64,000 nt of DNA, from the NCBI RefSeq assembly GCF_003918875.1, contig NW_025767002.1, forward strand, positions 3,410,001-3,474,000. The letters are read 5' to 3'. Each line of letters starts with the position of its first letter. Position 1 is the first letter of the stretch. Under the pieces are notes generated by a model. That model did no database searches, was not told the origin of the DNA, and saw only the letters and a program-made list of their open reading frames with translations. Shown here in pieces: positions 5,426 through 47,224 of the stretch. The DNA comes from Haliotis rubra (lineage: Eukaryota). The translations under genes were made by a program, and so were the position numbers.

Positions 5426-8078
5426 TCAGACCTTGGCGTCCGATGCCAAGTATTTCTCTAGAGCGTCCAGCAAGTCATTGACTCCCATGTGGTACGGTGG
5501 TTTCCGGAAGCCCGTTGTCACGTGACAAAGGCCTCTGTCCCACCAGTACTGCAAAATGTCCCTGACCTTTCTGGACTTCTCAACCTCTGACTTCAGCTTC
5601 TCGAGTTCTTCCTCTGCTTCAGCATTCTCCTGTTAGTTGGAAAATATGAAAACATTGCTTAGTTTTATCTTGCACTGCTCGAATGATTTTAACATTAAAT
5701 TATGAAATTGCCATGTATTTTAGCGTTAGTGAAGACGCAGGAGGGTCAGTCGTATGATGTGTAACAGTAAGCCATACAGAGTTGCGTTTCTTAGTTATAC
5801 CAGGATCAGACTCAATAATTGACAATTATCGTTAATTTGTCGTCACAACGCCCGTGCCCATGAGTTTCATTAAGTGGTAAACATATGCGAGCTGCATAGA
5901 TTTGGCCGTATTGCTTGAGCTGTGTAGATGAATACTGTTACAATCGGCGAAATCACAATTCATGCACTAAAATACGCCGTTAGTGTCGAATATTGACACA
6001 GTAGCTAGATTTGTGGTAAATCAAAATGTCATGAACACAGAGCCATTCAAAATGTCATGTCCGTGAAACCATTATCAAGGCATGCACATCACTATTTCGA
6101 ACCATCATCGGTACCTGCATCTGTTTCTTCATCTTCATCTGGCGGTTTAATCTGCTCCTGTTGGCCGAATCCTTGTTCCTTTGCTTTCTGCGATCAATCT
6201 TCTGCTTTTCTTCTTCCGTCAACTGAAGGGAAAAATTCAATATTATCAAATGATACAGATATCGATACATTTATCTATCTGAAAATTATTCACTGAATTT
6301 TAATACATAGAATCAGTTTGAATATTTCTCCTACCTCTCCAGACGGTTTGTTGGTGAAATAAACCATGAGTTCCTTTTCCCCTCTCTGGAGTCGCTTGAG
6401 CTGTATCTTCGACTTCAGTCCCTCTTTAACTGAGACAGTTGTAGGAGGGCCATGTGCTGCAACGGATGTGTCGCTCATCACTTCCGGTTCCGGAGGCGGA
6501 ATGTATCTTAGATGGGACGACTGCTCGGTGTGCTGTTGGTAGAGGACATCAACCTCTGCCAGGTCCATACCAGGATCAACCATCGTCTGGGTGGACATGA
6601 GGTCGGTCTCTGCAGAATTGGACGTGGAACCAGAGAGAATGTTCAAAATTTCTGGGAGCTCTGAACTTGAGCTGGAGGTCGGTGTTCCGAACGGTTCGGT
6701 CTTGTGGTTGGTAAATGGATTCGTCGTTGGTCCTAGTTGAGCGTTGATGGATCCAGGCTCCACCACTGAGTCTGTAGTGAAAGGTTCACTCAATTGCGGT
6801 ATGTTTCCATCAGGAATACCAGGAGTACCACAAGCAGTGGCAGCTCCAAAAGTAGGGTTCGGTTGGTACGTCGGCTCAAACCCCTGGATCCATTGCAGTA
6901 GATCGGCCAGGTCGACATGCGACAGGTCAGGCTGCAACGGAACAGCTCCTTGCATGGGGGTGTCAGCAGCAGCTTGGACGTCTTCAGCGTCGTTGGTAAA
7001 TGATGTTGGCAGCCGATCCGGGTTCTGCAGCATGGGGTTTCGAGCCTGTGTTGGGTTTCCGTGAAGCTGCATGGTCAAACTTCCCGGTGTCCCCATCGTG
7101 TCGGAGATCAGAGGGAGGATGTCTTCCACTTCAGGCACATTGGTAGTAGGCACAGGAGGAGTGGTAGTAGGCTGATGAGTAATGGTAGTAGGCAGAGGGA
7201 CAATGTTCGTAGGCAGAGGAGCATTGGTCGTTGGTAGTGGAACAATGGTAGAAGGCGGAAGAGCAATGGTAGCAGCCATTGATTCTTGGGAAGAGTAAAC
7301 ATCCATGGCCTCGAGGTCGTTTGCCCTACTTCTGCAATGTCTCTCAGTTTCACGTTGAGTGACATAGGCTTGGTCCATGGTGCTCGTTCCGCTAGGTTCA
7401 GGGACCTTTGTAGGTGTGAATGTGTACGTCTGGCTCATACTATTATGTATATCTGCATTGCTCCCTGATTGGACAGTGCTAATCATGTGACCTGTCTTTT
7501 CGACTTCTGATTGGTAGTCTACCGTGGAAGCGTACGACACGTCAAGGGGACTTCCTTCAGCCTATGAAGGAGAAAATGCTAATTTACCATTCACATCTAT
7601 TTTTAAATATGAATAATGTACACATAACTAAAGCTATTATCATCTCGATAAATGAACTAACTCCATTTTTTCTAGCTGAAATGTAAATGTATTGATCAAT
7701 GTTGTATTTATGATTCTCTTTCAGAAATGCAAATTGTTAAATAAAAAAAATATATAAGTCTTGATTAATCATAATTGGTAAAAAATGGTAGTCCCTGCCG
7801 TAACGAAATGAATTATCAAAAATGCGGTAACAACGTTTTCATTTTATATACATTTAGAAATTAAACGAATATCCTTTGGTGCATACATTTTCCAGAACAG
7901 TCTAACGGTAAATCAAACGAAAATCACTCACCTCGCAATATTCCTGATCCAAGTCGGGAAAGAGGATTGCCTTGTTCCACGCACTGTTGTTGCCGAAAAG
8001 CGCCTTCAGGTAGCTTGTGGGGTTGTCTGTGTCCACACCGTTCATATCCATTTCTTGCTTCCTTACACTGGGTTCCAT
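5426..8078 (-). CDS. bZIP gene copy 1, ATF3/Fos-like transcription factor, 4 coding exons, about 561 aa
   Basis: Exons 8078-7932 (MEPSVRK...QEYCE|gtgagt), 7561-6335 (long P/T/S-rich exon ending VSVKEGLKSKIQLKRLQRGEKEL...KPSGE|gtagga), 6222-6115 (108 nt, LTEEEKQKIDRRKQRNKDSANRSRLNRQMKMKKQMQ), 5629-5426 (ENAEAEEELEKLKSEVEKSRKVRDIL...DAKV*). All introns GT-AG, phase 0, frame continuous. Confidence 0.9.
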
Positions 8079-8215
8079 TTTAATTCCCCTGTCCGATTTC
8101 TGCTAAACGCCTTTTTATCAGTATTTATCTGCGACCGTCACCAAAGCTTGCTCGCGAGTCAATGGGCTGCTGTGGGCTGCGACCATCGCCAGCAGGCAAA
8201 TTGCTATTCAAACCG

Positions 8216-8264
8216 CCACGTCATTTTCTAGTCAGGGAAAACTTGTACACGAGTGATTGCATCA
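8216..8264 (-). promoter_or_regulatory. Candidate promoter motifs of copy 1: TGACGTGG (UPRE/CREB3/XBP1-type) and TGATGCAAT (C/EBP-ATF, ATF4-type)
   Basis: Plus strand CCACGTCA at 8216-8223 and ATTGCATCA at 8256-8264, about 140-190 bp upstream of the ATG; motif match only. Confidence 0.45.
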
Positions 8265-8486
8265 TCTTGCTTGCACTGTCTCGTGATGAGTTTCAACCAC
8301 GTGCCTGTCCAGGATTAAACACACATAAATATTTTAACTATCTTTATACTTCCTGGATAGATTACATTCAAATACTTTTACTCGCAGTAGTATGCACGCA
8401 TATGGGGCTACTACGTTGTGCACTTGCATCATATGCGTTGTGTTTAGGGGTGGTAATAAAGAGAAATGGTGACGCGTTGATAATGA

Positions 8487-8650
8487 ATGAGTGAGTATGG
8501 TTTTACCCCGCTTTTAGCACTATTCCAGCAATATCAACACGGGGGACACCAGAAATGGGCTTCACACATTGTACCCATGTGGGGAATCGAACGCGGGTGT
8601 TCGGCGTGACGAGCGAACGCTTTAACCACTAGGCTACCCCAACGGCCCCG
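8487..8650 (-). mobile_element. tRNA-derived SINE family A, near full length
   Basis: Reverse complement GGGGTAGCCTAGTGGTTAAAGCGTTCGCTCGTCACGCCG...TTCGATTCCCCACATGGGTACAATGTGTGAAGCCCATTTCTGG...GCTGGAATAGTGCTAAAAGC with (ACTC)n tail. Confidence 0.9.
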
Positions 8651-8759
8651 GTGCGTTGATAAGATGTCTGTCTTTGAAAAGTTTGTTAACGCTTGTACGT
8701 CCTATCCAAATTGAAAGTTTTTTTAAGTATCAATAACCGAACACAATGCCAACATCTGG

Positions 8760-8990
8760 GGTAACTCCTACCAACTGTATACATCCCCGATCCCCCTTCG
8801 CACTGACTGTGTCAGACGTTGACCTTGACCAGGTAGTGCGGTCCATTCTTGATGGAGGTCTTGTTCCAGTACATCTTGTGCTGGAGGATCTCTGCGACAC
8901 CCCATAATGTGAAACACAATCGCAAACATGCTCTATGGGACTGAGATGTGGACACCGATGGGTCACGTTAGCGTTGTTAACGCATCTTCC
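8760..8990 (-). mobile_element. Degenerate Tc1-like transposase C-terminal fragment
   Basis: Translates to CPHLSPIEHVCD, resembling the Tc1 SPDLSPIEHxW motif; no intact ORF. Confidence 0.5.
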
Positions 8991-9046
8991 CGAACGAAAT
9001 CACCAACGGCATGTGCACGAGAGGTCGGCCATCAAATGTACAACAT

Positions 9047-9330
9047 TGACATCTCTTGACCGCCTGCTAGTTCAACTCTCGCTTGCGTTCCTGGGGGCCA
9101 GTCGTTTTGAGGCATTCCTGATTTGTGAAAACAACTGGGTTTGAAGTTTTACATCAAAACCTCGTGAATCCGAACAGAGCCATCTCAGTGAAATTATAAT
9201 ACTCTTGGATTTACAATCATGAATGTGCAGAAATATCCCTCAAATTTGAACGGTAATTGTCCGGATAATGTGGTGTCCGGACTAAACATGTTTTATAGGG
9301 AATATAGGATTCATGAAATCTTGGCCAAGG
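9047..9330 (-). pseudogene. Pseudogenised fragment of bZIP copy 2 (basic-region exon plus upstream intron)
   Basis: After an acceptor AG, 9117 onward reads ECLKTTGPQERKRELN*QAVKRCQ versus copy 2 EYLKTLPPEERKRELNRRAAKRCR, with an in-frame TAG at 9069-9067; 9125-9330 closely matches intron sequence 14325-14540. Confidence 0.85.
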
Positions 9331-9617
9331 ATTGCCATCGATATTTAAAACATTGACAAGGATGTCAGTGATGTATCGTTGTCCATTCAGATTCTATCTG
9401 ACCATGTCAAGGCCCAAAGGGTTGTCCGATGTGTTGCCAATCACACAATTGTATTCATACGTGGTGTCTTATGTTACCTCGCTGGAGGTAATACGGCATG
9501 TACATTTTGAAGAATGACGTTGTATGGCGAAGAATATATAAGGTGTTTCCGTAGATACATATGCTATGTTTGAAATGATAAGCATGCCGCTGTATGGTCT
9601 GTACCATGTGGACACAT

Positions 9618-10665
9618 GACTAATAATCTGTATGTAATCTGTGGGTGTCCAGGTGGATGCTAGACTAGTAATCTGTATGTAATCTGTATGTGTCCAGGAG
9701 GACACCAGACTAATAATCTGTATGTGTCAGGAGGACACCAGACTAATAATCTGTATGTAATCTGTATGTGTCCGGGAGGACAGGAGGACACCAGACTAAT
9801 AATCTGTATGTAATCTGTATCTGTATCCAGGAGGAGGAGACTAGACTCATCTGTATGTAATCTGTATGTGTCCAGGAGGACACCAGGATACTAGAATAAT
9901 CTGTATGTAATCTGTATGTGTCCAGGAGGATACTAGACTAATAATCTGTATGTAATCTGTATGTGTCCAGGAGGACACTAGACTAATAATCTGTATGTAA
10001 TCTGTATGTGTCCAGGAGGACACCAGACTAATAATCTGTATGTAATCGGTATGTGTCCAGGAGGATGCTAGACTAATAATCTGTATGTAATCTGTATGTG
10101 TCAAGGTGGATACTAGACTAATAATCTGTATGTAATCTGTATGTGTCCAGGAGGATACGAGACTATAAATCTGTATGTAATCGGTATGTGTCCAGGAGGA
10201 TACTAGTGTCCAGGATGGATACTAGACTCGCCAGCAACACTTCTTTTACTCAGTGTCTGTGTTTTTGTTCTAATGTAATCTGTATGTGTCTAAGAGGATA
10301 CTAGACTAATAATCTGTATGTAATCTGTATGTGTCCAGGAGGATAATGGAATAATAATCTGTATGTAATCTGTATGTGTCTAGGAGGATACTAGACTAAT
10401 AATCTGTATGTAATCTGTATGTGTCCAGGAGGATACTAGACTAATAATCTGTATGTAATCTGTATGTGTCCAGGAGGATACTAGACTAATAATCTGTATG
10501 TAATCTGTATGTGTCTAGGAGGATACTAGACTAATAATCTGTATGTAATCTGTATGTGTCTAGGAGGACGAGACTAATAATCTGTACTAGACTAATAATC
10601 TGTATGTAATCTGTATGTGTCCAGGAGGATACTAGACTAGTAATCTGTATGTAATCTGTATGTGT
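9618..10665. repeat. Tandem minisatellite, 45-bp unit, about 20 copies
   Basis: Unit CCAGGAGGATACTAGACTAATAATCTGTATGTAATCTGTATGTGT; source of the SWTHTDYIQIISLVS ORFs. Confidence 0.95.
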
Positions 10666-11344
10666 CGTCATGGTCAATAATGTCGCAAGAAATGCTACCA
10701 GGAGACTACATCTTCGCCAGCAACACTTCTTTTACTCAGTGTCTGTGTTTTTTTGTTCTTTTTGTTTTTATTGGTTGGGGGATTTGGTCTGAGTGTCTAA
10801 AGCTTGACTTACTTGCATGCCACACTGTTTACTTTGTACAACTATTGGTTGTCCTGTTGAGGTAGCATCACCCTATAGCCCATCTCACAGACTTCCCCCA
10901 CAATGAAAACACTTCTCCAAACCAGGTGAAGAGGATATGTGTTTAATGTCGCATTGGTGCCTGCGTACGCGCGCGCGTGCGTGTGTGTGCGTGGTGGACA
11001 GTGTGTTGTCACCGATGCAGGGTACCAACAAGTACCATATTTTAAAATCTAACGGTATGACGCTGCTGGGGATCGAACCGCCCACCTACCCTCCCTTCTG
11101 ACATACATGTCATTCCGTTATTTATTACCTACGAGGGCGAAAATATCGGGGTTCATATTTTTCATACGATGTCCTAGGGCAAAATATCACTTTGTCATGG
11201 TGACGTGACGGCATGAAACAATGCTATGACGTCGAGTTTCTTCTGTGACGTTGCATTCTACATGCGGCGACGGCGGGTAGCCAGCCTATGTTTGAAAGTA
11301 GATTTGGCTTTAATTTCCTCAATTTGACGACTTCGGTAATAAAC

Positions 11345-11494
11345 AGAGTATTATATTCGTGCCCACATCATACTATGTTTACGACACTCGTGCCTAAATA
11401 TCGGCATATCCCTCGCTCTCGCTCGGGAAATACCAACATTTAGGCACTCGTGTCGTAAACATAGTATGGTATGGACACTCATATAATATCCTCT
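11345..11494. mobile_element. About 150-bp palindromic hairpin, probably the end of an unclassified non-autonomous element
   Basis: Left arm ...CATACTATGTTTACGACACTCGTGCCTAAAT... is nearly the reverse complement of right arm ...ATTTAGGCACTCGTGTCGTAAACATAGTATG...; arms about 70 bp. Confidence 0.7.
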
Positions 11495-11654
11495 ATGTAT
11501 AACTGACTAGATACTGGAAACAGTTCTCAGAAAATACGTTTTGTAGTGAACCAGTAATGTTTATCAAGCATGCATATCATACGGGTATACGTTTACATTC
11601 GTGTCAGTCCGTGATATCTCCTCAGAAAGATGCCAGTTGTTCCTAGTGCATATG

Positions 11655-11816
11655 GGCGGTGGGGTAGTCTAGTGGTTACAGCGTTCGCTTGTCACGCTGA
11701 AGACCCGGGTTCGATTCCCTTCATGGGTACAATGTGTGAAGCCCATTTCTGATGTCCCCCGCCGTGATATTGCTGGAATATTGCTAAAAACGGTGTAAAA
11801 CCAAACTCACTCACTC
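11655..11816 (+). mobile_element. SINE family A, full length
   Basis: GGGCGGTGGGGTAGTCTAGTGGTTACAGCG...GACCCGGGTTCGATTCCC...CCAAACTCACTCACTC. Confidence 0.9.
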
Positions 11817-12187
11817 CGAGTGTACAACAAGCTGACACAGGTCATAGAACAAGTAAACATTGATACTTTTTAATCAATATCAGTAAAATAAATTACACAT
11901 TCAGATAATACATGATCATTCATTGTACTCAATCACCGAAATCAAAGATATTGTGCTTGCTTTAAAGTTTGTGTAAACAGCTCCTGAATCATGACAAAAA
12001 AAACCCCCCCCCCCCAACCCCCCAAACAAACCCCGAAAGTTCTGTGGCAGTTTCGTCACTATACACATAAACAATGTTCCGTGAGGGAGCCTCGCAGCTT
12101 CATACAACTATTGTAATGTCGCGGATCTCCACCTTGACATGTTGTTGATCTCATGCCAGACCCCTTGAAAGGGTCAGCCACCTTGAC

Positions 12188-24628: not shown

Positions 24629-27600
24629 TTATACACGGCTGTTTTGGTTCAACCTTGTCCGAACTTGCAGAAGCCGTTGTCTTACTTCTGTTAAGTCGCT
24701 GCGCTGTTGGAGGAGAAGTTTCACCCTCTGAAATATGATCAATAAATTCATGTGTTAATTATATGTCATTTAATTATGATGAAAAACATACCTATATCAC
24801 CTAACACTTTTTAACCCGTCATAGCCTCCAACATAGTATTCGCTTCAGGACCTGTTACATGAAAGTATCCGTCATACTTTCCATCATTGTACCCACATCG
24901 TACCCGCCCAAGTACCCGCTGTGACCGTTACAGTCACGATGCCGGTCATGAACTGACTACAATCATGAATTGGGTTTTATGTTGCTTTTTGCAATATTCC
25001 AGCAATATCATGGCGGGGGACCCCAGAAATGTGCTTCACGCATCGTACCCATGGGGGGATTCGAACCCGGGTTTTCTGCTTTTACCATTAGGCTACCCCA
25101 CCGCTCCATAATATCATGGAAGGAACAGTCGCTTAACACTGCTATGTCATCATCAAATCAAGGTCCAGGACATACTATGGTAACTGCATGAACGCCAAGA
25201 ATAATTTCTTGCTTGTATAATATTCAGCCATCGTCAAACAAGGGTGGATACTTTCTTTTGTTCGTAAGTTTATTTCCCGTCACAGTACCCGCTTTTGATA
25301 GTGATACACCGTTCCTCATACTATGTAGATAATATCCGTTGTCACTTCCGGTTAGGGTCTGTGCCTGCCATAATACCAGTTTAGTACGCGTCAAAGTACA
25401 GGTTGTAGCACTCACATTATAACCCGTTAAAGTAACTATAGTCTGTTTGCAGTGAAGACGTACCGATGAATTTCACTTTAAACAAAAAAGTAAAGCAAAT
25501 AATGTGAAATTAAGATTGCGACACCCTCGTAATTTTACCTTGCCAATTGCACTTTGAATCTCAGAATTTTATTCATCTTAGGAAAAAAGTTGTTTAACAA
25601 ACGATCATAGATTCAAATCGATATTATTGGTTTGTATTACAAGGGGGTACGCGCAGAAGTTGGAACACTGAAACAAATGCACGTGCGGTACGTGATGAGC
25701 GTTAACTTAGACCAGCCCTACTTGTTCTCGGTGTTTCATTTAATGTGCATACACCCTTGTAATACAAACCAAAAATAATGATTTGAAACCACGATCGTTT
25801 GTTAAACAACTTTTATCCTAAGTTTAATAAAATTCTGATATATTTTAAATGTTCAGTTGGCAAGATAAAATTATGAGGATTCGCAATCTTAATTTCACTT
25901 TTTTCGATTTACTTTCTTGTTTAAAGTGAAATTCATCGGTACGTTTTCACTGCAAACAGACTATAGATTTCGCAGACACAGCTTTTTGAGGGGGTGAGGT
26001 GGGGGCTACACAGTACATATGGTCACTTAATAGGGGTGGGTGGGGTGCGCACCCCTGCATCCCCCGTCTGGATCTGTTTATGAGTCCCCACTAAAATATT
26101 TCACTAAAATTTCATACTACCAACCTGTTCCAAGTCCTTCAGGTTCTGTAGTCGCTTGTCTCGGCATTTCTTTGCCGCCTTCCTGTTTTGTACACGTCTC
26201 CGAACCAGTGCGTCGTCACAGTGATCGGCGGCCTGTAGTATATAAAACAAGCATGATTTGAAACAACGGGTTTAACGTCTCGTTCAAGATGTTTCATTCA
26301 GAAAGCGGCGTACATTTGTACTCGTCGGGATTTTATAGTCTGTACTATGCAGGTTTGGTAGTACTAGCCACCATGCCACAACTCAACATTAATACACACT
26401 CATTGAGTGAGTATAGTTTTACGCCTCTTTTAGCAATATTCTAGCAATATCACGGCGGGGGACACCAGAAATGGGCTTCATACATTGTATCCATGTGGGG
26501 AATCGAACCCGGGTCTTCAGCGTAACGAGCAGACGCTTTAGCCATTAGGCAACCCCACCCCGATACCCACCCAGGCATACTATATTGACTCCGAGCCGAC
26601 CAGTAGGCTACTTGATTTATTCTCTCAATGCCGAGCACCAGGCAGGGAAAAAACTGGTACCATCATTTAACGCTTTTAGCGTTCGGCAGGGGCAGCCTGG
26701 TGGTCAAAGCGTTCTCTCGTCACACCGAAGACCTGGGTTCGATTTCCCACATGGTTACACTATGTGGAGCCTATTTCTGGTGTTCCCTGCTTAGATATTA
26801 CTGGAATATTGATAAAAGCTGCGTAAAACCATATTCACTCACTTTTGGCTTTTCGCGTTCAGGGACTCGAACAACCGACTGAGGCTCCACGGACGGACAC
26901 TCTATCTACTCGACAACGGAGGTGGTGGTCTGAGATGAGTTTGTTCCTGAATGTTACATAAAAGTATAATTTTATGCATGTACCTGATGGCTTTTGTCCT
27001 CCGACCTCCCCTCCTCTGTTGCCATGGTTACATGGCTGAGGGTTCCAATTGACTTCTGGAGTAAGGGCGTTTCAGTACCACCACGTATCGAGCTCCTTTG
27101 GATGTCTTTGTTGGTATCTTCGAAATGACCGTCCGTTGAATGACCAGGACCCTTCAGATATGCGATGAGGTCATTGTAGGCCCTTTGTGTGATGTGGTCA
27201 TTGCATGAAGGAGTGCAGTGCCCAGCACTTCCGGTCCCCTCTGCAGAAAATGGACCCGTTTTGGCAAAGTCCAAACTGACCTCGTGACGACCTATCCCGA
27301 TTGCCAAAACATTAATCTCTGCATCCTTAGCAAACGTTTGACTGCTGCAGGAACCGGTGCCTTGTACTTGGTATTGTTCATCTTCTGATGAGGGATACAG
27401 AGCTTCCATTGCTTCAGAACGTTGTTGCAGTGATGGAGATACTCCTTTCTTTACCACCATGGTGTCAGTATTTACCAATTCCTGCAACACTGACCGAGGT
27501 ACCTCATCATAGATCACATTCATAACATCATCAAGCAACCCAGATACATCAGGGCTGACGTCATTGTCCATCAGGATGGTGTGAAGGTTCTGTGACGTCA

Positions 27601-32239: not shown

Positions 32240-32440
32240 CGTAAGTTCGGCAACCCATGCTTGTGGTGAGAGGCGACTATCAGGATCGGGTGGTCAGAGT
32301 CACTGACTTGGTTGACACAAGTCAAAAAGCGTAGATCGATGCTCATGCTGTTGATCATTGGATTGTCTGGTCCAGAATCGATTATATACAGACCGCCTCC
32401 ATACAGCTGGAATATTGCTGAGGGAGGCGTTAAACAACTG
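32240..32440 (+). mobile_element. SINE family B copy
   Basis: AACCCATGCTTG...GAGGCGACTA...GGATTGTCTGGTCCAG...GCTGGAATATTGCTGAG. Confidence 0.8.
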
Positions 32441-32491
32441 TCTTTAAGGCAGACCTGGTCTCGTCGCTGTATGGCTGGAATAATGTCGATG

Positions 32492-32533
<42 letters not shown>

Positions 32534-34503: not shown

Positions 34504-34788
34504 TGCCCTAAATGGATATATCAGTTGATCTTTGAATTCGATTCTGTTTCCAACTGTTTGTGTGAAGCCAAACAGTGGTTATGTTTCACAAATGAAAATA
34601 TCGCCACTTTTAATTTTTTCATGGCCCATGTAAAAATGTTATCCTGAACTCTTAATGTGTCATCGTGGAAATTTTTAGGGTGGTAGTTTTAGCAAAAGGT
34701 CACTGTTACCTAACAAATAGCTTGGGTTAAAGTTAGGTAAACATGTTATACCAACACATTGTGTCTGTGTGAAGTCATGGTCAACACG

Positions 34789-34953
34789 AGCCGTGGGGTA
34801 GCCTAGTGGTTAAAGCGTTCGCTTGTCACGCCGAAGACCCGGGTTCGATTCCCCACATGGGTACATTGTGTGAAGCCCATTTCTGGTGCCCCCCGCCGTG
34901 ATATTGCTGGAATATTGTTAAAAGCGGCGTAAAACTGAACTCACTCACTCACT
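34789..34953 (+). mobile_element. SINE family A, full length, with 14-bp target-site duplication
   Basis: TCATGGTCAACACG at 34775-34788 and 34953-34966. Confidence 0.92.
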
Positions 34954-36912: not shown

Positions 36913-39424
36913 TCACACTTCACTGATGACATCCGGGCATGAGTGATTCATCAGTACGTCAGTGAATACGTCAACTTCCTCGCTGATACATCGGATGTCC
37001 GCTTCCAGTCGGGAGATGTCTCTCTGCAGCCAGGCAGTTTCCTGGACGAGGAAACCCAATAAGTTGTATTGCATTAAATATTATTAATATATTAAACATT
37101 ACATGATATGCTTACATAAACGAATGCTACCTTGTATACGCAATGATAAACAGATTCATTATCACATGTACATGTAGCTTTAACGCCGCCATGTCCTGCG
37201 CAGAGTTGCGTCCCTTGACCACGCGAGGATTCGGTGATCATGGTTTTGAATCCCAGACTAGGGAGGTTATGCCGTTTTGTTTGTTATAATAGTCACATTG
37301 TTAAACGCATGTCACTATTGTAGCTTTTGTCTGATCATGACACTTCGTAACTACTGTTTGAAGCTCTTAATAATGATAATAAATCATAATAATAATAAGT
37401 AGCCCATTTAGATTGCGCTACATCCACACCGACAGCATGCTCATAGCGCAGGACAGTTAATTATTACCTCGGATAACCCAAGCTGCGCAAGAAGGTTATA
37501 GTCACATGACTTATCCCACCGGGTACCCATTTTCTGCTGGGTCAACAGAGGCAATTTTGAACAAACTCACCTGCCTAAGGTGAAACCACATGTATCACAT
37601 ATGCTTCGTTGTGGGACAGGACTAACGTCCTAGTAACTCTCAGGAGTCAACGTTTCACTCATATAAGATACTCAACGGGCCAAAATGCTCTCAGTAATAC
37701 CGGACCCACCTGTTCCAAGACCGCTTGTCTGAACCTTCTTCTCCTTCTACTCATCTGTGCATGGTGGATGTTCCTTGCTTTGATGCGTTTTTGACTGTCC
37801 TGCTCTTTGCCGATATTCTGAAACACAGGGATAAGGTAGTCTCAGTACCAACATCAACAGGTAGTAGAGGGAGTGAATGAGTTTGCTTTTACGCCGCTTG
37901 TGGCAATACTCTAGCAGTATCACTCCGGGGAACACAAGAAAGGGCTTCACTCACCGTACCCATAAGAGAATCGGACCCAGTCATCGGCAAGACGAGCGAA
38001 CGCTTTAACCACTAGGCTAGCCCAGGTCGTAGATTATTATCAATACAAGAAAGCAGACCCACCTGGCTTACCTGAACGGCCTTCACTGATGTTCTGTTTC
38101 CGGTGCGTGGCCTCTTTCGCTTTGTAGCAGGTTGGGTCGACGTCACTCCGCTCACAGGGCCTTGGCGTCTGTCATGAAGATGCGGATCATCACCATCTTC
38201 GTCAAACATAGATACCCCATCAGCTATACGTTGGACAAACAGAGGAACAGCTAGTGCTCCCGTAGAGGTTGCATTTTCTCCATATACCTGGCCTACATCA
38301 GATATATCTGATACAGGACCTGGGTATGTCTGACAGACACGAGAAGAATCCCCTACGCCAGAAGTTGAAAGGACTTGTCCAGTTCTTCCAAGTCCTCTAT
38401 CAGATGAGCTCCCTGCACCAGGAGCGGAAGTGACATCACCGCCATTTGCCAGATCTTCAGGAACATTCGGTGGTGTCGATAGGGATGCAAAGTGACCTGA
38501 TTGATTTGGGGAAGTTATATTTGGACGTGTATCGCTTCCATTAAATCCCGTATCTGTTCCTTTTTCTCCTAATTTGACCTGGAGATGCTGATGGATGCAC
38601 TGGGTTCCGCCTTCAAGTAGCTGTAGAGCTGTGATGATGGCATCCAGAGCTTGTTGTTCATCGTTCTTGTAGAGCCCTTCCTACAGTGGCGACACAAAAA
38701 ATGTTGAGGACGATATTTAACATGTAAATGTTCCTGCGTCCTGCAAATGTATTCATTGCTAAGGGACTTATAACTGAGGACCTATAGTTACAATTTGATA
38801 TCATACAATTACATTGAGACCATCCAAAGTGTCCAGCGAACAATTATTTTTTAATGGACTCATTGGATCGAACAACCAATGTTCCGCTCTCCCGGAAGAC
38901 GCTCTATCCACTCGACCACGGAGGATTTACCATGATGATAGTGTTACATGCATTAAATGCAGTATGAAAACCTCGTATATCCGGCAACGAGCGACGAGTC
39001 AGTTCTTTAACAGAATTTCACATTCCCCAAACAGCGTATCCTGTTTCAAATCCTTTTCTAAAAAGTGTGACGCAGCGACCTCGATTAAAATAATTGTTCC
39101 ATATACTTTAAACATAGATAATTGTTGTATAATTAATTGAGAAAGTATACACTTGGCGTTTTGAGATTATTTAAATACAAAACCCAAAACAACGTAACTA
39201 TTTTGAAATGTGTTATTATGTACGTAGTCAAAATTAAAACACTTTTCAAAATATTTTCATCGTTTTTCTGGAAAATAATCAGTCTACGCTATCATTGTAT
39301 ACGTCAGTTTACTAATATAATGGTATGAAGCAAAGCGGTATGAAGTATTACGCAATGGAAGGGCTAACGTAATGCGCTGATACGGCATACATTATGAATT
39401 GATAATTATGTTGATACTTACCAT
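36913..39424 (-). CDS. bZIP gene copy 4, divergent Fos/ATF3-like transcription factor, about 282 aa
   Basis: Exons 39424-39422 (ATG|gtaagt; tentative), 38680-38072 (EGLYKNDE...KRKRPRTGNRTSVKAVQ|gtaagc, 203 open codons), 37817-37710 (108 nt, NIGKEQDSQKRIKARNIHHAQMSRRRRRFRQAVLEQ|gtgggt), 37041-36913 (ETAWLQRDISRLEADIRCISEEVDVFTDVLMNHSCPDVISEV*). Confidence 0.87.
37870..38022 (-). mobile_element. SINE family A in intron 2 of copy 4
   Basis: Diverged family consensus on the minus strand. Confidence 0.8.
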
Positions 39425-39550
39425 TGAAATGTGTTTGGTCGACAGTCGAGGTGTAGCAGAGGTAAAATGTGTCGTTGTACCGATCAGCGTATAGGACATA
39501 TGGATAAGTAAACTGTTAAATCTTGAAGCTTTGTAGTGACATCCGTCATG

Positions 39551-39592
39551 CTTATATTTAGAATAACATACGACTTAGTGTCACATGAGTCA
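39551..39592 (-). promoter_or_regulatory. Candidate copy 4 core promoter: TATA-like TAAATATAAG with an AP-1 site just upstream
   Basis: CTTATATTTA at 39551-39560 and TGAGTCA at 39586-39592; GGAAATTTCC (kB-like) at 40133-40142. Confidence 0.4.
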
Positions 39593-40631: not shown

Positions 40632-40880
40632 AGTGAGTGAATGAGTGTAGTTTTACGCCTCACCCAGTAATATTCCAGCTATATGGCGTCGATCTGTAAA
40701 TAATCGAGTCTGGACCAGACAATCCAAGGATCAACAGCATGAACATCGATCTACGCAATTTGGATACGATGACACGTGTTAACCAAGTCAGCGAGTCTGA
40801 CCAACGTACCGATCCCGTTAGTCGCCTCTTACGACAAACATGAGTTGCTGAAGATCAGTTCTAAACTGGACCTTTACAGG
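40632..40880 (-). mobile_element. SINE family B, near full length
   Basis: Reverse complement of the family B consensus including GTCGCCTCTTACGAC. Confidence 0.85.
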
Positions 40881-42299
40881 TAGCTGATTTGAATGTTTTA
40901 GAAGAGCTCAAGACTGGTTTCAGATTTGGAGAGTAGCGACAGTTGTTTAAATCGGCATTGATTGGTTGTGGCTCCGAAAATACTTCACAAAATATACATG
41001 GATGTTTTCTTCTCTGTTACCTGGCAGGTTTAGTTAGGCGTTGTTATCCAATGGTAAGGAGCATTAACAAGGATATTTGCCTTAAGAGGAGAATGGATTT
41101 AGTTGTGATAAAACTGCATTGAGCGCTCATATACTTGCATGATATTATAGTTGTCAGTCTATTTCTGTTCTGTTGATGTATAGGAAGAAATAAATGAAAA
41201 ATTAAACAAAATATGAATATGACAGAGAATATATACTTCTCTATTATCATCGTGTCGAGAATCCATTGGGCGTGAAAGGCAAACTAGTTTTATGAATGGA
41301 TGACATCGATGGCACTGGGTGTTAGTCATGGGGGTCAGCATGACGTGCTAGAGACCGGAAGCAGTCCGCATTTCTTCATGATAAAAACTGACGTCTGTTG
41401 TTGTACGTGACAAACTCGTTCAAGATAAACGCTGAAATATAACACATCAACGACAGCAAAGAACCTGTGTCATATATCCGAGGAAACGATTCCATTTCGT
41501 TAAAATATTAAAAAACCCGCGGTGACAATCCTATGAAATTTAATACAGAAGGATGACTGCAACTTTCAAACAGCTATCGTTCATATAATGTCCCTAAATA
41601 TACAAGCAATTCCAGCCTATGGTGTCCACGTTGGGTATCTTCCAATTGGCAGACACCCAACTGACAGTCGACTGACAGACACTGATTTAGAAGGTTAATT
41701 AGGGTAACACCTACGGATATAATTGTATCAGATAAATGCTCTGCTTAATGTGCCAAGGATGTCATGATAATGACCAGTAAGCATTACATGTTATGTGCAA
41801 ATTATATGTTATGTACAAATATTATATTTTAGGGAAATGTTTTAGAAATGCAGTGGACGTGATCAACATAGTACCATATTTACTATTTATTTTTTTTATC
41901 TCTGTTGAACTTGTAATAAATATGCTGAATGAACATAACGTCTTTGATTCCATTGGACTGATCCATTATAAGAAATTGGTATCAGCTTGAGGATTAGTTG
42001 TGCACTGAACCAGAAATGTTGTTGTTTTAAGCTGTGTTAGATATGGCTGTCTAAGTTTTGTGAGGGTACCTATGGAACAGTCCCCTGTCTAGTGAGTAGA
42101 TTAGGGTGAGCGTGAATAGGTTCGTTACCGAGAAGTTTGATTGTGTGTTAACAGAACTTTGTTGTGATTAAGTAATTATCTGTCTTCTCAAAATATTTTT
42201 TTACTATCAATTTAAATATTTTATTTTAGTCATTCAAGAAAAGGATTTAGGACAAGTTATCGAACTTAAATTCATGTTATATCAATGTACACAAGTGAC

Positions 42300-43140
42300 A
42301 TACATGGGCTAGGATATGTACAAGAGAAGTTCACTGAGGAAACGTTTTGTTTGAGAGATATAGATGTGTGCATATTTGAAACATTCTTATTTTCAGTAAC
42401 TGAGAGACCTGCATTGCCATGTAATATAAGATTAATCAGTGTCATACTTTAAACAATATTTTCTAAAGATTTTAACAGTTTATGTGTTTGAATAGTATAC
42501 AATGGACATTCAAAGAAGTAATGAAAAACATTCTCACATCCATGGCCACACTGACATGATGCGTCATTTTTCACATTTATTCTAAATAAATCAAAATTAA
42601 GTGTACTCGTCATATATCTTAATCTTGTGTGCAAAAAGTTTAACTTCCTAATTCTATATGAATAATATTTAGATGCACAATTTTCTTTCACGTGGATATG
42701 ATTTAAATGATGCAACAGAGTCGCAATTTATAATAGCTAAGGTTATATTATTCCACATTTTAACTGCTGATGTAATAAAAGATGATGTTGAATACCTCAG
42801 TCTTGTACATGGTTGGCTAAAATTATCGGAGTTTTTAACTCATAACATGTCCGGTTGCCTACTACAGGTGACAGTAAATCCTAAGAAAAACTGTTTTTGT
42901 TCTATTTAGTATGAACTTTATAATTTCTGAAATGCTCCAATCATTTTAGATGTCATTTTGACAATGTTTTCAATATGATGATGCCAACTCCCGTAAGACG
43001 ATAAAGTTAAACCTAAATGTTTATGAAAATCATCTGTTTTCATATTGCAGCAATCAAAATTCAGATTAATGTCTTTTCGGCCATCTTTCAAAGTAAATAA
43101 TATAGCTTCAGTTTTTTCTTGTGTTATTATTTGCACTTTT
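42300..43140 (-). mobile_element. Degenerate CR1-type LINE 3' fragment
   Basis: HKHLGLTLSSYGSWHHHIENIVK and LHTRLRY...CQCGHGCENVFHYFFECPLY C-terminal motifs. Confidence 0.82.
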
Positions 43141-43932
43141 CAAATATAGCATGTAGGTAGTAGCTAGTCTGTTCACTGAACCGTAAAATGTTGTTGTTGT
43201 CTGTCTGTGTAATGGGAGGATACCTCCATGTTTCATGACTTTAAGATGCAATCAATTATGCTTTTTCTCCAAGAGTTGTTGACTCAAAACTTTTTTGTAT
43301 CAAGGTTACAACCATGACCATATTTGAGTTTTCACACTCTTTTTATTTTAGACATGCGCAGGACGCTCCAAATGTGACTCATAGTCACTCTACCATATAT
43401 TCTCGTATTATTTCAGGTGAACAGTGACATAATCACTATTGTATGATGGACACTTTTAGCGGATATTAGGCCATATGGACGTATTTTCTATTTCTGTATG
43501 AACAGATCATGTCGTGAAGGTTGAACTGATTTACTTGTGACTCATTTAATGATTAACATGGTGTACAACAAGGGTACTAACTTCCACCGACCCTCTTCTC
43601 TATTTATTCAGATGACGTAGTGACTTCGACGATTTATGTATGGTATTACTGAACATTTCTATATGCTATCGTATGTGTTGCTAGTGATATTGCCTTGCTT
43701 GCCTCGGATGAAAATTCACTTCCGTATGTTCTGTAAGTGTCAGGAGTGGCGTCTTGATAAAACACATAAATTAAATGCTTCATTTGTTTGATGTTTCGGT
43801 GCGTCGAGTCTGTTGTCTTCTGATTAGCACTGATTATGAGTCTGTTTCAAATGATACGGCCCTAAAAATAGCCATCCCATGAAAAAACAGAGCAACAGAA
43901 TTTCTGTGCTATATGCTCTTCATATGGATACT

Positions 43933-44097
43933 GTGAGTGAGTGAGTTTAGTTTTACGCCGCTTGTAGCAATATTCCAGCAATATCACGGCGGGGGATACC
44001 GGAAATGGGCTTCACACATTGTACCCATGTGGGGAATCGAACCCGGGTTTCGGCGTGACGAGCCAACGCTTTAACCACTAGGCTACACCACCGCCCC
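43933..44097 (-). mobile_element. SINE family A, full length
   Basis: Near-consensus copy with (GTGA)n tail. Confidence 0.92.
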
Positions 44098-45279
44098 TGA
44101 ATGGCGGAGAACAAGCCTACAAAACATCCGTCGTGGAACTTACATAAGCAGCCCGTGTTTATTACGCGATGCTACCAGCGGGAAACAATGGTAAGGTTCG
44201 CTGACTTACTTCATGCGTGTCATTATATACCACTTGTATTGATCGATGCTCATGATGTCAGTCACTGGATTGCCTGCTGAAGACTCAGTTATGTGTAGAC
44301 CGCCTTTTATTGCTGGAATAGTGTGGTGTTAAACAACAACCACAAACACTCTGTGTTTCTAATCTCATACTCAACTGCAAATAAACCTGCGCACATATCC
44401 GTGTTAAAAAAAATACAATACAGAACTATTTCGAATAGTTTTAGTATTTCCCTTTATTCAGATATTAACTATCCTGCTTTAACTGATACAGAAAATGATT
44501 TCCTACTTAAACTAAATCACATATATCTCTATAATACATTTTATGAACAGCAACTTTCATCCTAATTGCTTATTCAATAACTAGGTCTTGCACAACGGAT
44601 CACATGGTCTGTCCGTCAACACAAAACAATTTCAGTGATATGGCTGTCTTAAAGGGGCTCGCTACCACTGAGTCCCGTGGACAGGGAGTGTTCTGCATGC
44701 CGTGAGAAAGACCGAGCCGTAGCCCGATTTAACTGCCATTTACACAGACATCATGAAGTCTGTGTCGGGAGAGAGGCAAAGGATTTTAAGGACGCATGAT
44801 TTGTTACCCAAGTCTTATCAACCCCCTTACCCCCCACAAGAAAAAAATCAACACCCCACCACCCCTCAAGCCGTCCTTCAAGAGGCACAGAGGCAACATA
44901 TTTTCACTGAACGCGGGACAAAACGCAAGATGGCCGACTTTTCATGACTCATACACTGGGTCACGACAACCTGGCAGCAGCTGAATACGTGAGCATCCAG
45001 ATCTTGGCCCGGTTGCGTTGTCATGGCAATAATGACGTCACGACCCCAGGTCACCCGGCTTGATGTTTCAAATACCAGCAAATATTAGGTAGCGGAAATG
45101 ACCTGACATAACCTAATCACTTGAAATAGAGGTTTTGTTTCAAGGGAATAAAGTAACAGATAGACCATTGTTAAGAGAAATGTTGGGAGAATATGTAAAA
45201 CGGCGCCGCCAGAAGAGCGTATGATCTATGTTTGACAACGGGGCCTGATTCAGAAGGTCGACAGGCGACACAGGTAATT

Positions 45280-47224
45280 TCATGTAGGCGGAGTATCACG
45301 GGGAGGTCGAAGAAGACACTCGTGGCGACGGAGAACGTCCTCCAGGACCTGGATTTGTCCACGGCTGTTGGCGATCTCGTCCTTCAGAAGGGCGTTCTCC
45401 GTCTCATATCCGGCGATCTCCTGGATAAACACAAAACGAAATCATTGGCGAGTTAGTGGTGCTGAACGTTTATTGCTCAACTTGATTTCAGTGTTTTCAA
45501 CTGCAATGGGCTTTATAGTTTGGGTGACTACATTGACTTACTATTCAAGCAGTCATAAGGGCGTATTAAACGAGCAGTGTTATTACCGAGGTTCGGGTTT
45601 CCTGGATGTACTACTATGACGTTCATGTTGGGAGACAATGGTTACTATAGAAACGAGGACCTATCCCTTTTCATATGTCCACTTTGCACAGAAAGACATC
45701 CATGACGTCATGTACATCACTTAATCATCTCTGTTTTGAGGACAATGGAATAGTTTTAAACTATAAGAATTTCTTTACCATGTCAATGTTCTCGATACTA
45801 TTGTATAGATCATCCAGAACATCTCACAAGTACGTAAGCTAATAATTATAGATATATGTTTCCCATTTGAGAACAAATAATGCTCATTGAAGGAGTGTTC
45901 GTTGTGGTATTGCACCACAGTCTATGTTGGCCCTAGACAGTCGATAGACGCATAAATTACGCGGACTACAAAAAAATATTTTAAAATGTTTTGCTAACTT
46001 CAGAAATGACCGATTATTGAATGGTTGCTACTGATATAAAGGCTTGAGATACTGCTTTCCAGTCGTCTTATTCTTTATGTATTCACACCTCCCATAACCT
46101 ATTTACCATACATCCTCACTACCTCATGCATTCCTGCTTCCTCTCGATAGAAGATGTTTATATATAGAATATATACAGCAAACCCTCGTTAACACGAGTT
46201 CTTGTGGAACTGTCCGGGTTACCCAATTCTGGGTTAACAATTGCATATACACGCAGAAGCTTTCGAACTAATTGGTTCTGGAATAATCGGGTTTTACGAT
46301 ATTAAATATGTTTAAATTACCTCTTGCAACAGTTGTTCCCTCTCCTTCTTCCTAATACGACTCATGGTGGCGTGGTGCTTGTTTTTCTTCTTGACTTTTT
46401 CTCGTTTGTCCATTTCCCCTGCTGTCATCTGAAAAACGTACATGAACATTCCGTTTACAATCGAGTCTGAACCAGATAATCCAGTGATTAACATCCTGGG
46501 TGAAATATAAGAAGTTATTCTGGTACGAGCATGTGACAGATTAAAAAAAGTGTCAGTTTTATAAAAGACATTCTTGCCCAATGTTTAGCCCATGAACAAT
46601 GTTCATCAAACTTAAAAAACAAGTCTCCTATTGGGTGGAATATACGAAGTTATTCCTGGTACGAACATGTGACAGATGCAAAAACGTGTCAGTTTTAAAA
46701 CGACAAATGTTTATCCCAAGGACAACGGTCCTCAAATTTGAAAAACAAGTCTACTATTGGATAAAAATATGAGACGTTAATTATTCCTGGCATGAGCATG
46801 TAGCAGATAGTTACCTCAGGTGGTGGTTTCGGCTGACTCGACACAGTAAGGTTGGGTCGCCTCAACTTGATTTTGGTGTTGAGTTCCAGCTTGATTAGGG
46901 GCATAAAGCTGTGACATTCGCTTGTGGCAACCATGGCCTTGGCAACCGCAGGGTCAAGACCATTGTCCAGGGGGTCAACCATATTCAGGTGATCGTCCTG
47001 GGGCATCACCATATATAGGTGATCGCATCACCATTTCAGGTGACTCAGATTCATCATCCATTATATATAGGTGAGGCTCAGACATCATCCTGGGACTCGG
47101 GCAAAACCATGTTTAGGTCATCGTCCTGGGGGTCCGACCTCAACATATCCAGACCCACGTCCTGGGGGCCGGGCACAACCATATTCAGACCAGAAACATC
47201 CAGGGGATTATTTGAATGGTCCAT
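45280..47224 (-). CDS. bZIP gene copy 5, ATF3-like; 5' part disrupted (stop and frameshift at about 47013-47082) or translated from the ATG at 47012
   Basis: Exon 47224 (or 47012) to 46815 (...MPLIKLELNTKIKLRRPNLTVSSQPKPPPE|gtaact), 46428-46321 (108 nt, MTAGEMDKREKVKKKNKHHATMSRIRKKEREQLLQE|gtaatt), 45420-45280 (EIAGYETENALLKDEIANSRGQIQVLEDVLRRHECLLRPPRDTPPT*). Confidence 0.82.

What the first reader, a model, noticed from the sequence alone, without database searches (positions are those of the whole stretch)
5426..47224. Tandem array of five divergent Fos/ATF3-type bZIP genes plus a dead sixth copy
Seen: five minus-strand spliced genes spaced about 8-12 kb apart. Each has an exactly 108-nt phase-0 basic-region exon (6222-6115, 14320-14213, 26232-26125, 37817-37710, 46428-46321) followed by a zipper exon with heptad positions at residues 5/12/19/26, and copies 2, 4 and 5 have His at 33 followed by Cys. 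Known: this exon size and intron placement, and the terminal HxxxC-type motif, are characteristic of c-Fos/ATF3. Copies 1 and 5 also carry an upstream motif (VKEGLKSKIQLKR, IKLELNTKIKLRR) resembling ATF3 VKEELRFAIQNK. Inference: a lineage-specific, fast-evolving local expansion of AP-1/ATF3-family factors, normally low-copy and conserved. The long second exons show no similarity to each other by eye.
Basis: partly seen in the sequence, partly recalled or inferred. Interest (0 to 1): 0.9.

Follow-up and report, generated by a model that had tools for sequence, protein, structure and literature searches.

The report
Abalone cluster of divergent ATF3-type genes
Five neighbouring genes in a blacklip abalone (Haliotis rubra) window encode very divergent relatives of the stress-response regulator ATF3, and belong to an old, mollusc-wide expansion of that family, not to a recent abalone-only burst.

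Summary
The window is Haliotis rubra QXJH01000033.1. It carries five intact minus-strand genes. Each has an exactly 108-nt, phase-0 basic-region exon with AG/GT borders, followed by a zipper exon in the same heptad register. Three RefSeq proteins (copies 1, 4, 5) map residue for residue onto these models. A called 363-aa product fits copy 2. Copy 3 is my own model. No assembly gap lies inside any gene.

The family is ATF3-type, narrower than "Fos/ATF3". A profile from copy 1 and its off-window paralogue retrieved 272 cluster representatives. Among them are proteins named ATF3-like in starfish, acorn worm and Biomphalaria. The match covers an upstream [ILV]K-E-E-L-[KR]-x-x-I-Q-x-[KR]-R motif, usually 47 residues before the basic-region Asn. 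The same 108-nt exon occurs in Asterias, Ptychodera, Patella, Pomacea and Mytilus members.

"Lineage-specific, fast-evolving local expansion" is only partly right. Copies 1, 2, 4 and 5 were found in H. asinina. The bZIP parts are constrained (dN/dS about 0.2) and the N-termini are not (0.6-0.8). An AU test rejects one array clade (p 0.017). The cluster extends beyond the window. A separate ATF-3-like gene lies on another contig. The "sixth copy" is a 274-nt fragment.

Function is inferred, and no expression data were available.

The parts
5426..8078 (-). Copy 1 (RefSeq 'flocculation protein FLO11-like', 561 aa). Exons 8078-7932, 7561-6335, 6222-6115 (basic, 108 nt) and 5629-5426 (zipper, conserved C-terminal tail, stop).
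   Evidence: P0001 maps residue for residue and all introns are GT-AG. The ATF3-type motif VKEGLKSKIQLKR lies 47 residues before the basic Asn. Pfam bZIP_1 scores 16.3 bits, below the cut-off of 27.6.
9048..9321 (-). Relic fragment of copy 2: the 3' part of intron 2 plus about two thirds of the basic exon, with an in-frame stop.
   Evidence: 79.3% identity over 290 aligned positions to 14251-14537. tblastn matches the copy 2 domain at E 1e-5. A matching fragment lies at the syntenic place in H. asinina, L003 8317-8588.
13221..16633 (-). Copy 2 (called product of 363 aa). Exons 16633-16481, 15608-14898, 14320-14213 (basic, 108 nt) and 13340-13221 (zipper plus stop).
   Evidence: The called gene span and 363-aa product come. 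The only in-frame exon 2 that gives 363 aa was found. All introns are GT-AG. The basic exon scores 29.5 bits on Pfam bZIP_2, above the cut-off of 22.3.
24629..27571 (-). Copy 3 (my own model, 264 aa from the first ATG). Exons 27571-26984, 26232-26125 (basic, 108 nt) and 24727-24629 (zipper plus stop). The zipper ends one heptad early.
   Evidence: Donor, acceptor and open frames are. The basic exon scores 31.8 bits on Pfam bZIP_2. It is sister to copy 2 with support 93/90. No annotated protein was retrieved for it.
36913..39499 (-). Copy 4 (LOC124284188, isoform X2, 307 aa). Exons 39499-39422, 38680-38072, 37817-37710 (basic, 108 nt) and 37041-36913 (zipper plus stop). It has an unusual N-I-H-H-A-Q-M-S-R basic core.
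   Evidence: P0006 maps residue for residue and all introns are GT-AG. An alternative donor lies at 38063. Pfam bZIP_1 scores only 10.5 bits. A non-Haliotis family profile scores 33.3 bits, against a maximum of 8 for shuffled sequences.
45280..47224 (-). Copy 5 (LOC124284189, 198 aa). Exons 47224-47084 (or 47090), 47021 (or 47027)-46815, 46428-46321 (basic, 108 nt) and 45420-45280 (zipper plus stop). Basic core N-K-H-H-A-T-M-S-R. Upstream motif IKLELNTKIKLRR.
   Evidence: P0147 and P0164 map residue for residue. The first 62-nt 'intron' has non-canonical ends (GT..AT or GA..GA). It skips a frameshift and a stop relative to the continuous H. asinina exon. The motif and bZIP parts are intact.
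12348..13282 (-). 98-nt minisatellite (9.5 units) that overlaps the end of the last exon of copy 2 and runs into its 3' flank. Each unit repeats the last 19 codons of copy 2.
   Evidence: Tandem Repeats Finder result. Repeated tblastn matches to residues 57-75 of the copy 2 domain.
17739..19326 (.). Two assembly gaps (17739-17898, 18766-19326) either side of a CTA-type microsatellite. Intergenic, between copies 2 and 3.
   Evidence: No exon of any model touches them.

Best explanation
The five genes are intact, selectively maintained paralogues of the ATF3 family of bZIP transcription factors. They sit head to tail in an old tandem cluster, which also holds at least two more members just outside the window.

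Each protein has three parts. The first is a long, low-complexity N-terminal region that evolves quickly and is probably a regulatory or transactivation region. In copies 1 and 5 an ATF3-type upstream motif follows. The last is a basic region plus leucine zipper, split by the family's conserved intron.

The likely mechanism is inferred from the family and was not shown here. The zipper pairs the protein with another bZIP. The acidic g positions of copies 1, 4 and 5 resemble partners that prefer heterodimers, such as Fos with Jun. The paired basic regions then bind TRE/CRE-like DNA.

The paralogues differ at DNA-contact positions: Ser or Cys before the invariant Arg, and His-His in copies 4 and 5 where most bZIPs have x-Ala. 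They also differ at core zipper positions. The cluster therefore most likely supplies a set of partners with different dimer and DNA preferences. By analogy with ATF3 these would act in stress or immune responses.
For: Gene models:
- Exon translations and splice borders hold for all five genes.
- RefSeq proteins map residue for residue for copies 1, 4 and 5, and a called 363-aa product fits copy 2.

Family assignment:
- Profile A4 (copy 1 orthologues plus fragments of the H. asinina copy 0 gene) found 272 representatives at E <= 1e-3. The matches span the upstream motif, basic region and zipper.
- Motif-to-Asn spacing is 47 residues in most hits.
- Hits include ATF3-like proteins of Ptychodera and Asterias, 'activating transcription factor 3' of Biomphalaria pfeifferi, and copy 5 itself.
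- The same 108-nt phase-0 exon, and a zipper exon with L5/12/19 (26), was found in Asterias, Ptychodera, Patella, Pomacea, Mytilus and a further H. rubra member. His33 is present in the Asterias, Ptychodera and Mytilus genes.
- A profile built without any Haliotis row scores the five domains at 33-55 bits, against a maximum of 8 for 140 shuffles.

Selection and age:
- Between H. rubra and H. asinina, dN/dS is 0.21 in the motif plus bZIP parts and 0.61-0.76 in the N-termini, at dS of about 0.3.
- Order and orientation of copies 5, 4, 2, 1 and 0 are conserved in H. asinina.

Zipper residues: the a, d, e and g positions are tabulated.
Against: - No expression or binding data could be examined.
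- Copies 1, 4 and 5 score below Pfam's bZIP cut-offs, and no solved bZIP matches copy 1 or copy 4 significantly (best bZIP E-values 0.03 to about 1).
- Copies 2, 3 and 4 lack a recognisable upstream motif. Their link to ATF3 rests on gene structure, array position, the similarity of copy 4 to copy 5, the terminal His...Cys of copies 2 and 4, and a weak tree join of copies 2+3 with the gene named ATF-3-like (49/32).
- Copy 1 has a poor zipper (A-L-S-L) and copy 3 a short one with charged a positions, so some members may not dimerise in the usual way.
- The first coding exon of copy 5 is disrupted in this assembly.
- A basic-region profile cannot by itself separate ATF3 from other bZIP families.
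Confidence: 0.8

Rival explanations
1. One reading: a recent, abalone-lineage burst of local duplications of one Fos/ATF3-type gene, followed by very fast divergence.
For: The genes are tandem and in the same orientation, with a shared exon plan. There is a relic fragment. The H. asinina copy 5 model fuses two tandem copy 5 units, so turnover does occur. Pairs 2/3 and 4/5 are each other's closest relatives within the window.
Against: Paralogues share only 11-31% identity over the 70-residue domain. Orthologues in three other Haliotis species keep 72-89% identity in the domain. Copy 0 groups with an oyster gene, copy 1 with bivalve and limpet genes, and copies 4+5 with a slug gene. One array clade is rejected at p-AU 0.017.
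Confidence: 0.1
2. The genes come from several different classical bZIP families (for example Maf-like, C/EBP-like or CREB-like) that merely lie next to each other.
For: The best solved match for copy 4 is MafA, and for the copy 1 profile MafG, though all are non-significant. A language-model search put CREBL2-like clusters first. The basic exons of copies 2 and 3 score best on bZIP_2.
Against: All five share the 108-nt phase-0 exon and the zipper register found in genes named ATF3-like. Copies 1 and 5 carry the ATF3 upstream motif at the family's position (47 and 42 residues before the Asn). Copies 2, 4 and 5 end the zipper with His...Cys at the family's fixed position.
Confidence: 0.06
3. 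Some or all copies are decaying pseudogenes that the annotation pipeline modelled as genes.
For: The RefSeq models of copy 5 need a 62-nt 'intron' with non-canonical ends to skip a frameshift and a stop. Copy 3 has no retrieved annotation and a shortened zipper. A relic lies in the array.
Against: All five models have open frames, and every intron but one has GT-AG borders. dN/dS is 0.21 in the bZIP parts of copies 1 and 4. The copy 5 bZIP is conserved in H. asinina.
Confidence: 0.04

Closest known systems
ATF3 (activating transcription factor 3), as named in Asterias amurensis, Ptychodera flava, Biomphalaria pfeifferi and Haliotis (P0163, P0160, P0169, P0173)
   Same: The exon plan is the same: an exon ending about 16 residues before the basic Asn, a 108-nt phase-0 basic exon, then a zipper exon with Leu at 5/12/19/26 and His33 followed by Cys. 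Copies 1 and 5 carry the upstream [ILV]K-E-E-L-[KR]-x-x-I-Q motif. The proteins retrieve each other by profile search.
   Different: None of the five keeps the canonical A-A-A-K-C-R basic core. Copies 2-4 have lost the upstream motif. Copies 1-4 carry long N-terminal extensions of about 200-460 residues. A separate gene named ATF-3-like lies on another contig, so these five are extra paralogues and not that gene itself.
Fos family (c-Fos, FosB), the nearest solved structures
   Same: FosB and c-Fos are the best solved matches for the starfish ATF3-like protein (E 1e-5) and are among the weak best matches of copies 1 and 4. Acidic g positions occur in the zippers of copies 1, 4 and 5. From my own memory, not checked here, c-Fos has the same g positions and a 108-nt exon 3.
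   Different: No window copy matches a Fos chain significantly (E 0.2-8). From memory, the upstream motif is not a Fos feature. The exon plan of Fos genes was not examined here.
Maf family basic region
   Same: Copy 4 and its orthologues have an aromatic or His residue where Maf has Tyr. Copy 4 reads N-I-[HY]-H-A-Q-M-S-R and MafA reads N-R-G-Y-A-Q-S-C-R in the alignment. This suggests a changed DNA contact.
   Different: There is no Maf extended homology region, the match is not significant (E 0.03), and the gene structure and array context are ATF3-type.

Membership tests
bZIP superfamily | Basic region with invariant Asn and Arg (N-x7-R) directly continuous with a heptad leucine repeat | tested here: met
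   All five copies have N-x2-[ASH]-A-x2-[CS]-R, with the Asn 21 residues from the exon end. The heptad d positions are in one shared register. Copies 1 and 5 have only two Leu among the first four d positions.
bZIP superfamily | Score at or above Pfam's gathering cut-off (bZIP_1 27.6 bits, bZIP_2 22.3 bits) | tested here: inconclusive
   The basic exons of copies 2 and 3 pass bZIP_2 on their own (29.5 and 31.8 bits). Copy 1 (16.3 bits, whole protein) and copy 4 (10.5 bits, whole protein) fail. Copy 5 was scanned by its basic exon alone (18.0 bits), which is below the cut-off but is not a whole-protein test.
ATF3 family | 108-nt phase-0 exon holding the basic region, with the downstream intron three residues after the first zipper Leu | tested here: met
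   Met in all five copies. The same exon is present in Asterias ATF-3-like, Ptychodera ATF3-like, H. rubra LOC124284182, Patella, Pomacea and Mytilus members. Whether Fos, JDP2 or BATF share it was not tested, so it may define a wider group.
ATF3 family | Upstream motif [ILV]K-E-E-L-[KR]-x-x-I-Q-x-[KR]-R about 47 residues before the basic Asn | tested here: inconclusive
   Met in copy 1 (spacing 47) and copy 5 (spacing 42), and in the off-window members copy 0 and LOC124284182. Copy 2 keeps only ...N-K-L-R-R and copy 3 only T-P-L-L, both read by eye. It is absent in copy 4.
ATF3 family | Zipper ending in His at residue 33 of the zipper exon, followed by Cys within three residues | tested here: inconclusive
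   Met in copies 2, 4 and 5. Copy 1 has Gly33-Leu-Cys-His and copy 3 stops at residue 32. His occupies this column in most named family members.
ATF3 family | Retrieval of, and by, proteins named ATF3 in a whole-database profile search | tested here: met
   The copy 0/1 profile retrieved the ATF3-like proteins of Ptychodera and Asterias and the Biomphalaria ATF3 cluster, as well as copy 5. Copies 2, 3 and 4 were not among the best 150 hits.
ATF3 proper (orthologue of the single deuterostome gene) | Canonical basic core (A-A-A-K-C-R type) and one-to-one orthology | tested here: not met
   None of the five has that core. The gene that NCBI names ATF-3-like lies on another contig in H. rubra and another chromosome record in H. 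asinina (P0173, P0144).
Fos family | Significant sequence similarity of the bZIP domain to Fos proteins | tested here: not met
   For copies 1 and 4, as single sequences and as profiles, the Fos chains score E 0.17-8.6. The joined domains of copies 2, 3 and 5 were not searched against solved structures.

The most novel reading that the evidence does not exclude
Molluscs, and perhaps lophotrochozoans more widely, may have turned the single-copy stress regulator ATF3 into a large, tandemly clustered family. Its members would have diverged in dimer code and DNA contacts, for example the His-His basic core of copies 4 and 5 and the Ser-for-Cys switches. Some have become invisible to standard domain models. 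If so, this would be a lineage-specific combinatorial network for environmental or immune responses that has not been described.
Probability: 0.4. Interest if true: 0.55.

Novelty: new member of a known kind. Interest (0 to 1): 0.4.

Why it matters
ATF3 is a single, conserved immediate-early stress gene in the deuterostomes sampled here. In abalone at least eight loci in two places carry its gene plan. A profile search suggests hundreds of such genes across molluscs.

Several of the abalone genes are annotated as 'uncharacterized' or misnamed 'FLO11-like', because their bZIP domains fall below Pfam cut-offs. Surveys of mollusc transcription factors are therefore likely to undercount them.

For abalone biology (heat, hypoxia and disease in aquaculture) these are candidate stress-response regulators. 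For bZIP evolution, the cluster is a natural series of paralogues with altered DNA-contact and zipper residues. The finding remains a divergent gene-family expansion, not a new kind of system.

Tried and rejected
- The third word-indexed protein search, with the 105-aa ORF of copy 5, found nothing because the real product (198 aa) lies outside the length window. Copy 5 was recovered later through the profile search.
- Looking up the contig of P0006 failed because only the longest isoform is on record.
- Searches of solved structures with the copy 1 and copy 4 domains and profiles gave only non-significant hits. Ribosomal uS13 came top for copy 1 and is a chance match of charged helices.
- Profile-profile comparison of the copy 1 and copy 4 domains was weak (probability 4%).
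- Language-model look-alikes pointed to CREBL2. I treated this as a lead only, and the gene structure and upstream motif do not support it.
- A TATA-like box and a TGAGTCA site just upstream of Met 47012 first looked like a promoter. The stretch is homologous to coding sequence in H. asinina, so I dropped the idea.
- Six literature searches found no description of an ATF3 expansion in molluscs and no intron map of the family.
- The joined bZIP domains of copies 2, 3 and 5 were not sent to the solved-structure or Pfam tools, because a spliced sequence has no reference. They were analysed in scripts instead.
- Collinearity across the two assembly gaps could not be tested. The H. asinina alignment stops at window 17528.

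Full report
**Source of the window.** A locus fetched around the annotated protein P0001 matches window 1-17738 at 100% identity. The window is therefore Haliotis rubra assembly GCA_003918875.1, contig QXJH01000033.1, at about 3,410,001-3,474,000. The five genes lie on the minus strand.

**Check of the observation.**
- Each of the five claimed 108-nt exons translates to 36 residues without stops and holds a bZIP basic region.
- Each is preceded by a pyrimidine tract plus AG and followed by GT.
- The zipper exons lie 485-1397 nt downstream, at 5629-5426, 13340-13221, 24727-24629, 37041-36913 and 45420-45280.
- A 363-aa product is called over 13221-16633. Only one in-frame exon 2 gives that length.
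- Copy 3 is my own three-exon model of 264 aa.
- Every intron is GT-AG except the first one of copy 5.
- A family profile scanned over all six frames finds exactly these five basic exons (E <= 1e-9; next best 0.83).
- The N-terminal parts of the five proteins show no significant similarity to each other.

**Assembly gaps.** The N runs at 17739-17898 and 18766-19326 flank a CTA-type microsatellite. They lie between exon 1 of copy 2 and the last exon of copy 3. No gene span contains an N. I did not try to fill them. The alignment with H. asinina stops at 17528, so continuity across them is unknown. A missing element inside the gaps cannot be excluded.

**The 'dead sixth copy'.** Window 9048-9321 is 79% identical to 14251-14537, which is the end of intron 2 plus two thirds of the basic exon of copy 2. 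It carries an in-frame stop. It is a fragment and not a whole gene. A matching fragment lies at the same relative place in H. asinina, so it predates the split of the two species.

**Which family.**
- By sequence alone the domains are hard to place. Copies 1 and 4 fall below Pfam's bZIP cut-offs, and the copy 5 basic exon scanned alone does too. No solved bZIP matches copy 1 or copy 4 significantly.
- The decisive result came from a profile of the conserved C-terminal part of the copy 1 orthologues plus two fragments of the H. asinina gene downstream of copy 1 ('copy 0', alignment A4). Searched against 1.84 billion cluster representatives, it gave 272 hits at E <= 1e-3 and 40 at E <= 1e-10.
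- The matched stretch covers the bZIP domain and also an upstream motif, [ILV]K-E-E-L-[KR]-x-x-I-Q-x-[KR]-R. This motif sits 47 residues before the basic Asn in most hits.
- Named hits are mostly molluscs: Solemya, Potamilus, Mactra, Pomacea, Ruditapes, Dreissena, Nucella, Biomphalaria, Gigantopelta, Arion, Patella, Mytilus, Batillaria and Saccostrea. There are two annelids (Capitella, Ridgeia) and three deuterostomes.
- Among the named hits, Ptychodera flava and Asterias amurensis proteins are called ATF3-like, and a Biomphalaria pfeifferi protein 'activating transcription factor 3'. Copy 5 itself is among the hits.

**Gene structure as a direct test.** I mapped six family proteins onto their own loci.
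- The genes were the ATF3-like genes of Asterias and Ptychodera, a further H. rubra member (LOC124284182), and members from Patella, Pomacea and Mytilus.
- All six have a 108-nt phase-0 basic exon. It is preceded by an exon that ends shortly after the upstream motif and followed by the zipper exon.
- In the starfish gene the zipper exon reads L5, L12, L19, I26, H33, then R-P-S-C.
- Fos genes were not examined. FosB and c-Fos are the nearest solved structures for the starfish protein (E 1e-5). No ATF3 chain appeared in that search.

**How each copy fits.**
- An ungapped 70-residue alignment anchored on the basic Asn shows His in the last column for copies 2, 4 and 5 and for most named members.
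- Copy 1 (spacing 47) and copy 5 (spacing 42) keep the upstream motif.
- Copies 2 and 3 keep only traces of it, and copy 4 none.
- Copies 4 and 5 share an unusual basic core, N-[IK]-H-H-A-[QT]-M-S-R.
- A profile built from the non-Haliotis rows alone scores the five domains at 54.8, 40.8, 34.5, 33.3 and 47.7 bits (copies 1-5), against a maximum of 8 for 140 shuffled controls. That profile shows they are bZIPs of this general type. It cannot by itself exclude other bZIP families, for which I had no competing profiles.

**Age and selection.**
- Copies 1, 2, 4 and 5 and copy 0 lie in the same order and orientation in H. asinina. The flanking non-coding DNA is alignable at about 75% identity. The H. 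asinina interval that should hold copy 3 was not fetched.
- Copy 1 also has orthologues in H. cracherodii and H. rufescens, and copy 4 in H. cracherodii.
- Between H. rubra and H. asinina, dN/dS is 0.76 (copy 1) and 0.61 (copy 4) in the N-terminal regions, but 0.21 in the motif, bZIP and tail parts of both, at dS of about 0.3.
- Paralogues share only 11-31% identity over the domain.
- In a careful tree of 35 named rows, copies 2+3 pair (93/90), copies 4+5 join an Arion gene (99/93), copy 1 groups with Potamilus, Mactra and Patella genes (85/88), and copy 0 with a Saccostrea gene (87/87). Forcing all array members into one clade costs 24.5 log-likelihood units (p-AU 0.017).
- Caveats: the tree has 70 columns and many long branches, and I had seen a quick tree before naming the group to test.

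**Extent of the cluster.**
- Copy 0 (610 aa in H. rubra, 595 aa in H. asinina; it has a precomputed Pfam bZIP_1 hit) starts about 7 kb beyond the window's low end.
- LOC124284182 (147 aa) lies 37 kb before the window on the other strand.
- A gene named ATF-3-like (P0173) lies on a different contig.
- Tandem or paired members also occur in Mytilus, where a second bZIP gene lies 5 kb downstream, and in Patella, where a second basic exon lies 4 kb away on the other strand.

**Copy 5 in this assembly.** In H. asinina the first coding exon is one open frame. In H. rubra the same stretch has a frameshift and a stop. The RefSeq models bridge it with a 62-nt 'intron' whose ends are GT..AT or GA..GA. 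This is either an assembly error in a repetitive stretch or a real lesion. If it is real, the downstream Met at 47012 would still give a 148-aa protein with the motif and the bZIP domain intact.

**Mechanism (inferred).**
- The proteins should dimerise through the zipper and bind DNA through the paired basic regions.
- The g positions are acidic in copies 1, 4 and 5 (E-E-E, E-D-D-E, E-E-E). From memory, c-Fos is the same, and this favours heterodimers.
- Copies 5 and 0 keep the Asn at the second a position that the Asterias and Ptychodera ATF3-like proteins have.
- Copies 2 and 3 have charged a positions.
- Copies 2 and 3 keep the Cys next to the invariant Arg, and copies 1, 4 and 5 have Ser. 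One paper in the library treats that Cys as a redox switch of DNA binding. I saw only its title and abstract (PMC1479340).
- No experiment or expression data were available to me.

**Verdict.** The evolutionary reading changes from a recent local burst to part of an old, conserved cluster within a mollusc-wide expansion. I found no paper that describes this expansion. All but copy 3 were found among existing gene predictions, so this is a set of new, poorly named members of a known family.

Noticed in passing
window 1-3400: A long tandem satellite with a unit of about 61 nt. blastn of the matching locus against the window gives a ladder of hits offset by multiples of 61 nt at 85-92% identity.
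   Followed up: no
window 12348-13282: A 98-nt minisatellite of 9.5 units at 97% identity, starting inside the last exon of copy 2. Each unit re-encodes the last 19 codons. H. asinina has only about two extra units, so the array grew in the H. rubra line.
   Followed up: partly
window 5035-5203, 32246-32438, 40645-40874, 53201-53421, 56697-56894, 59101-59271 and others: A dispersed repeat of about 170-210 nt, SINE-like, on both strands, also present in the H. asinina loci. A second dispersed repeat of about 155 nt lies at 8488-8641, 11660-11814, 20705-20858, 26404-26557 and elsewhere.
   Followed up: no
window 20165-20422 (+) and 42918-43136 (-): Short ORFs that look like C-terminal fragments of a non-LTR retrotransposon reverse transcriptase (each has a K-H-L-G motif), judged by eye only.
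   Followed up: no
L002 (H. asinina CM074530.1, upstream of the copy 4 orthologue); protein P0041: The 396-aa H. asinina model is two complete copy 5 units fused head to tail. H. asinina therefore appears to have an extra tandem duplicate of copy 5 that the H. rubra window lacks.
   Followed up: partly
L003 18394-18400 (H. asinina copy 0): The intron after the basic exon of copy 0 starts with GC (AAG|gcaagt), a GC-AG intron at the family's conserved position.
   Followed up: no
H. rubra proteins P0018 and P0159: LOC124284182 has a near-identical twin, LOC124283811 (one residue different), on another contig of 1.2 Mb. This is either a haplotig or a very recent segmental duplicate.
   Followed up: no
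copy 1 and copy 0 C-termini (window 5426-5530; L003 18760-18840): Beyond the zipper, both carry a conserved tail with a similar helix-like motif (L-L-D-A-L-E-K-Y-L-A-S against L-Q-E-A-I-R-D-V-L-E-S). It is nearly unchanged among the three Haliotis copy 1 orthologues aligned there, and its function is unknown.
   Followed up: no
window 50037-50191: A third assembly gap, outside the finding and upstream of copy 5. No bZIP exon was detected between 47.3 and 64 kb.
   Followed up: partly
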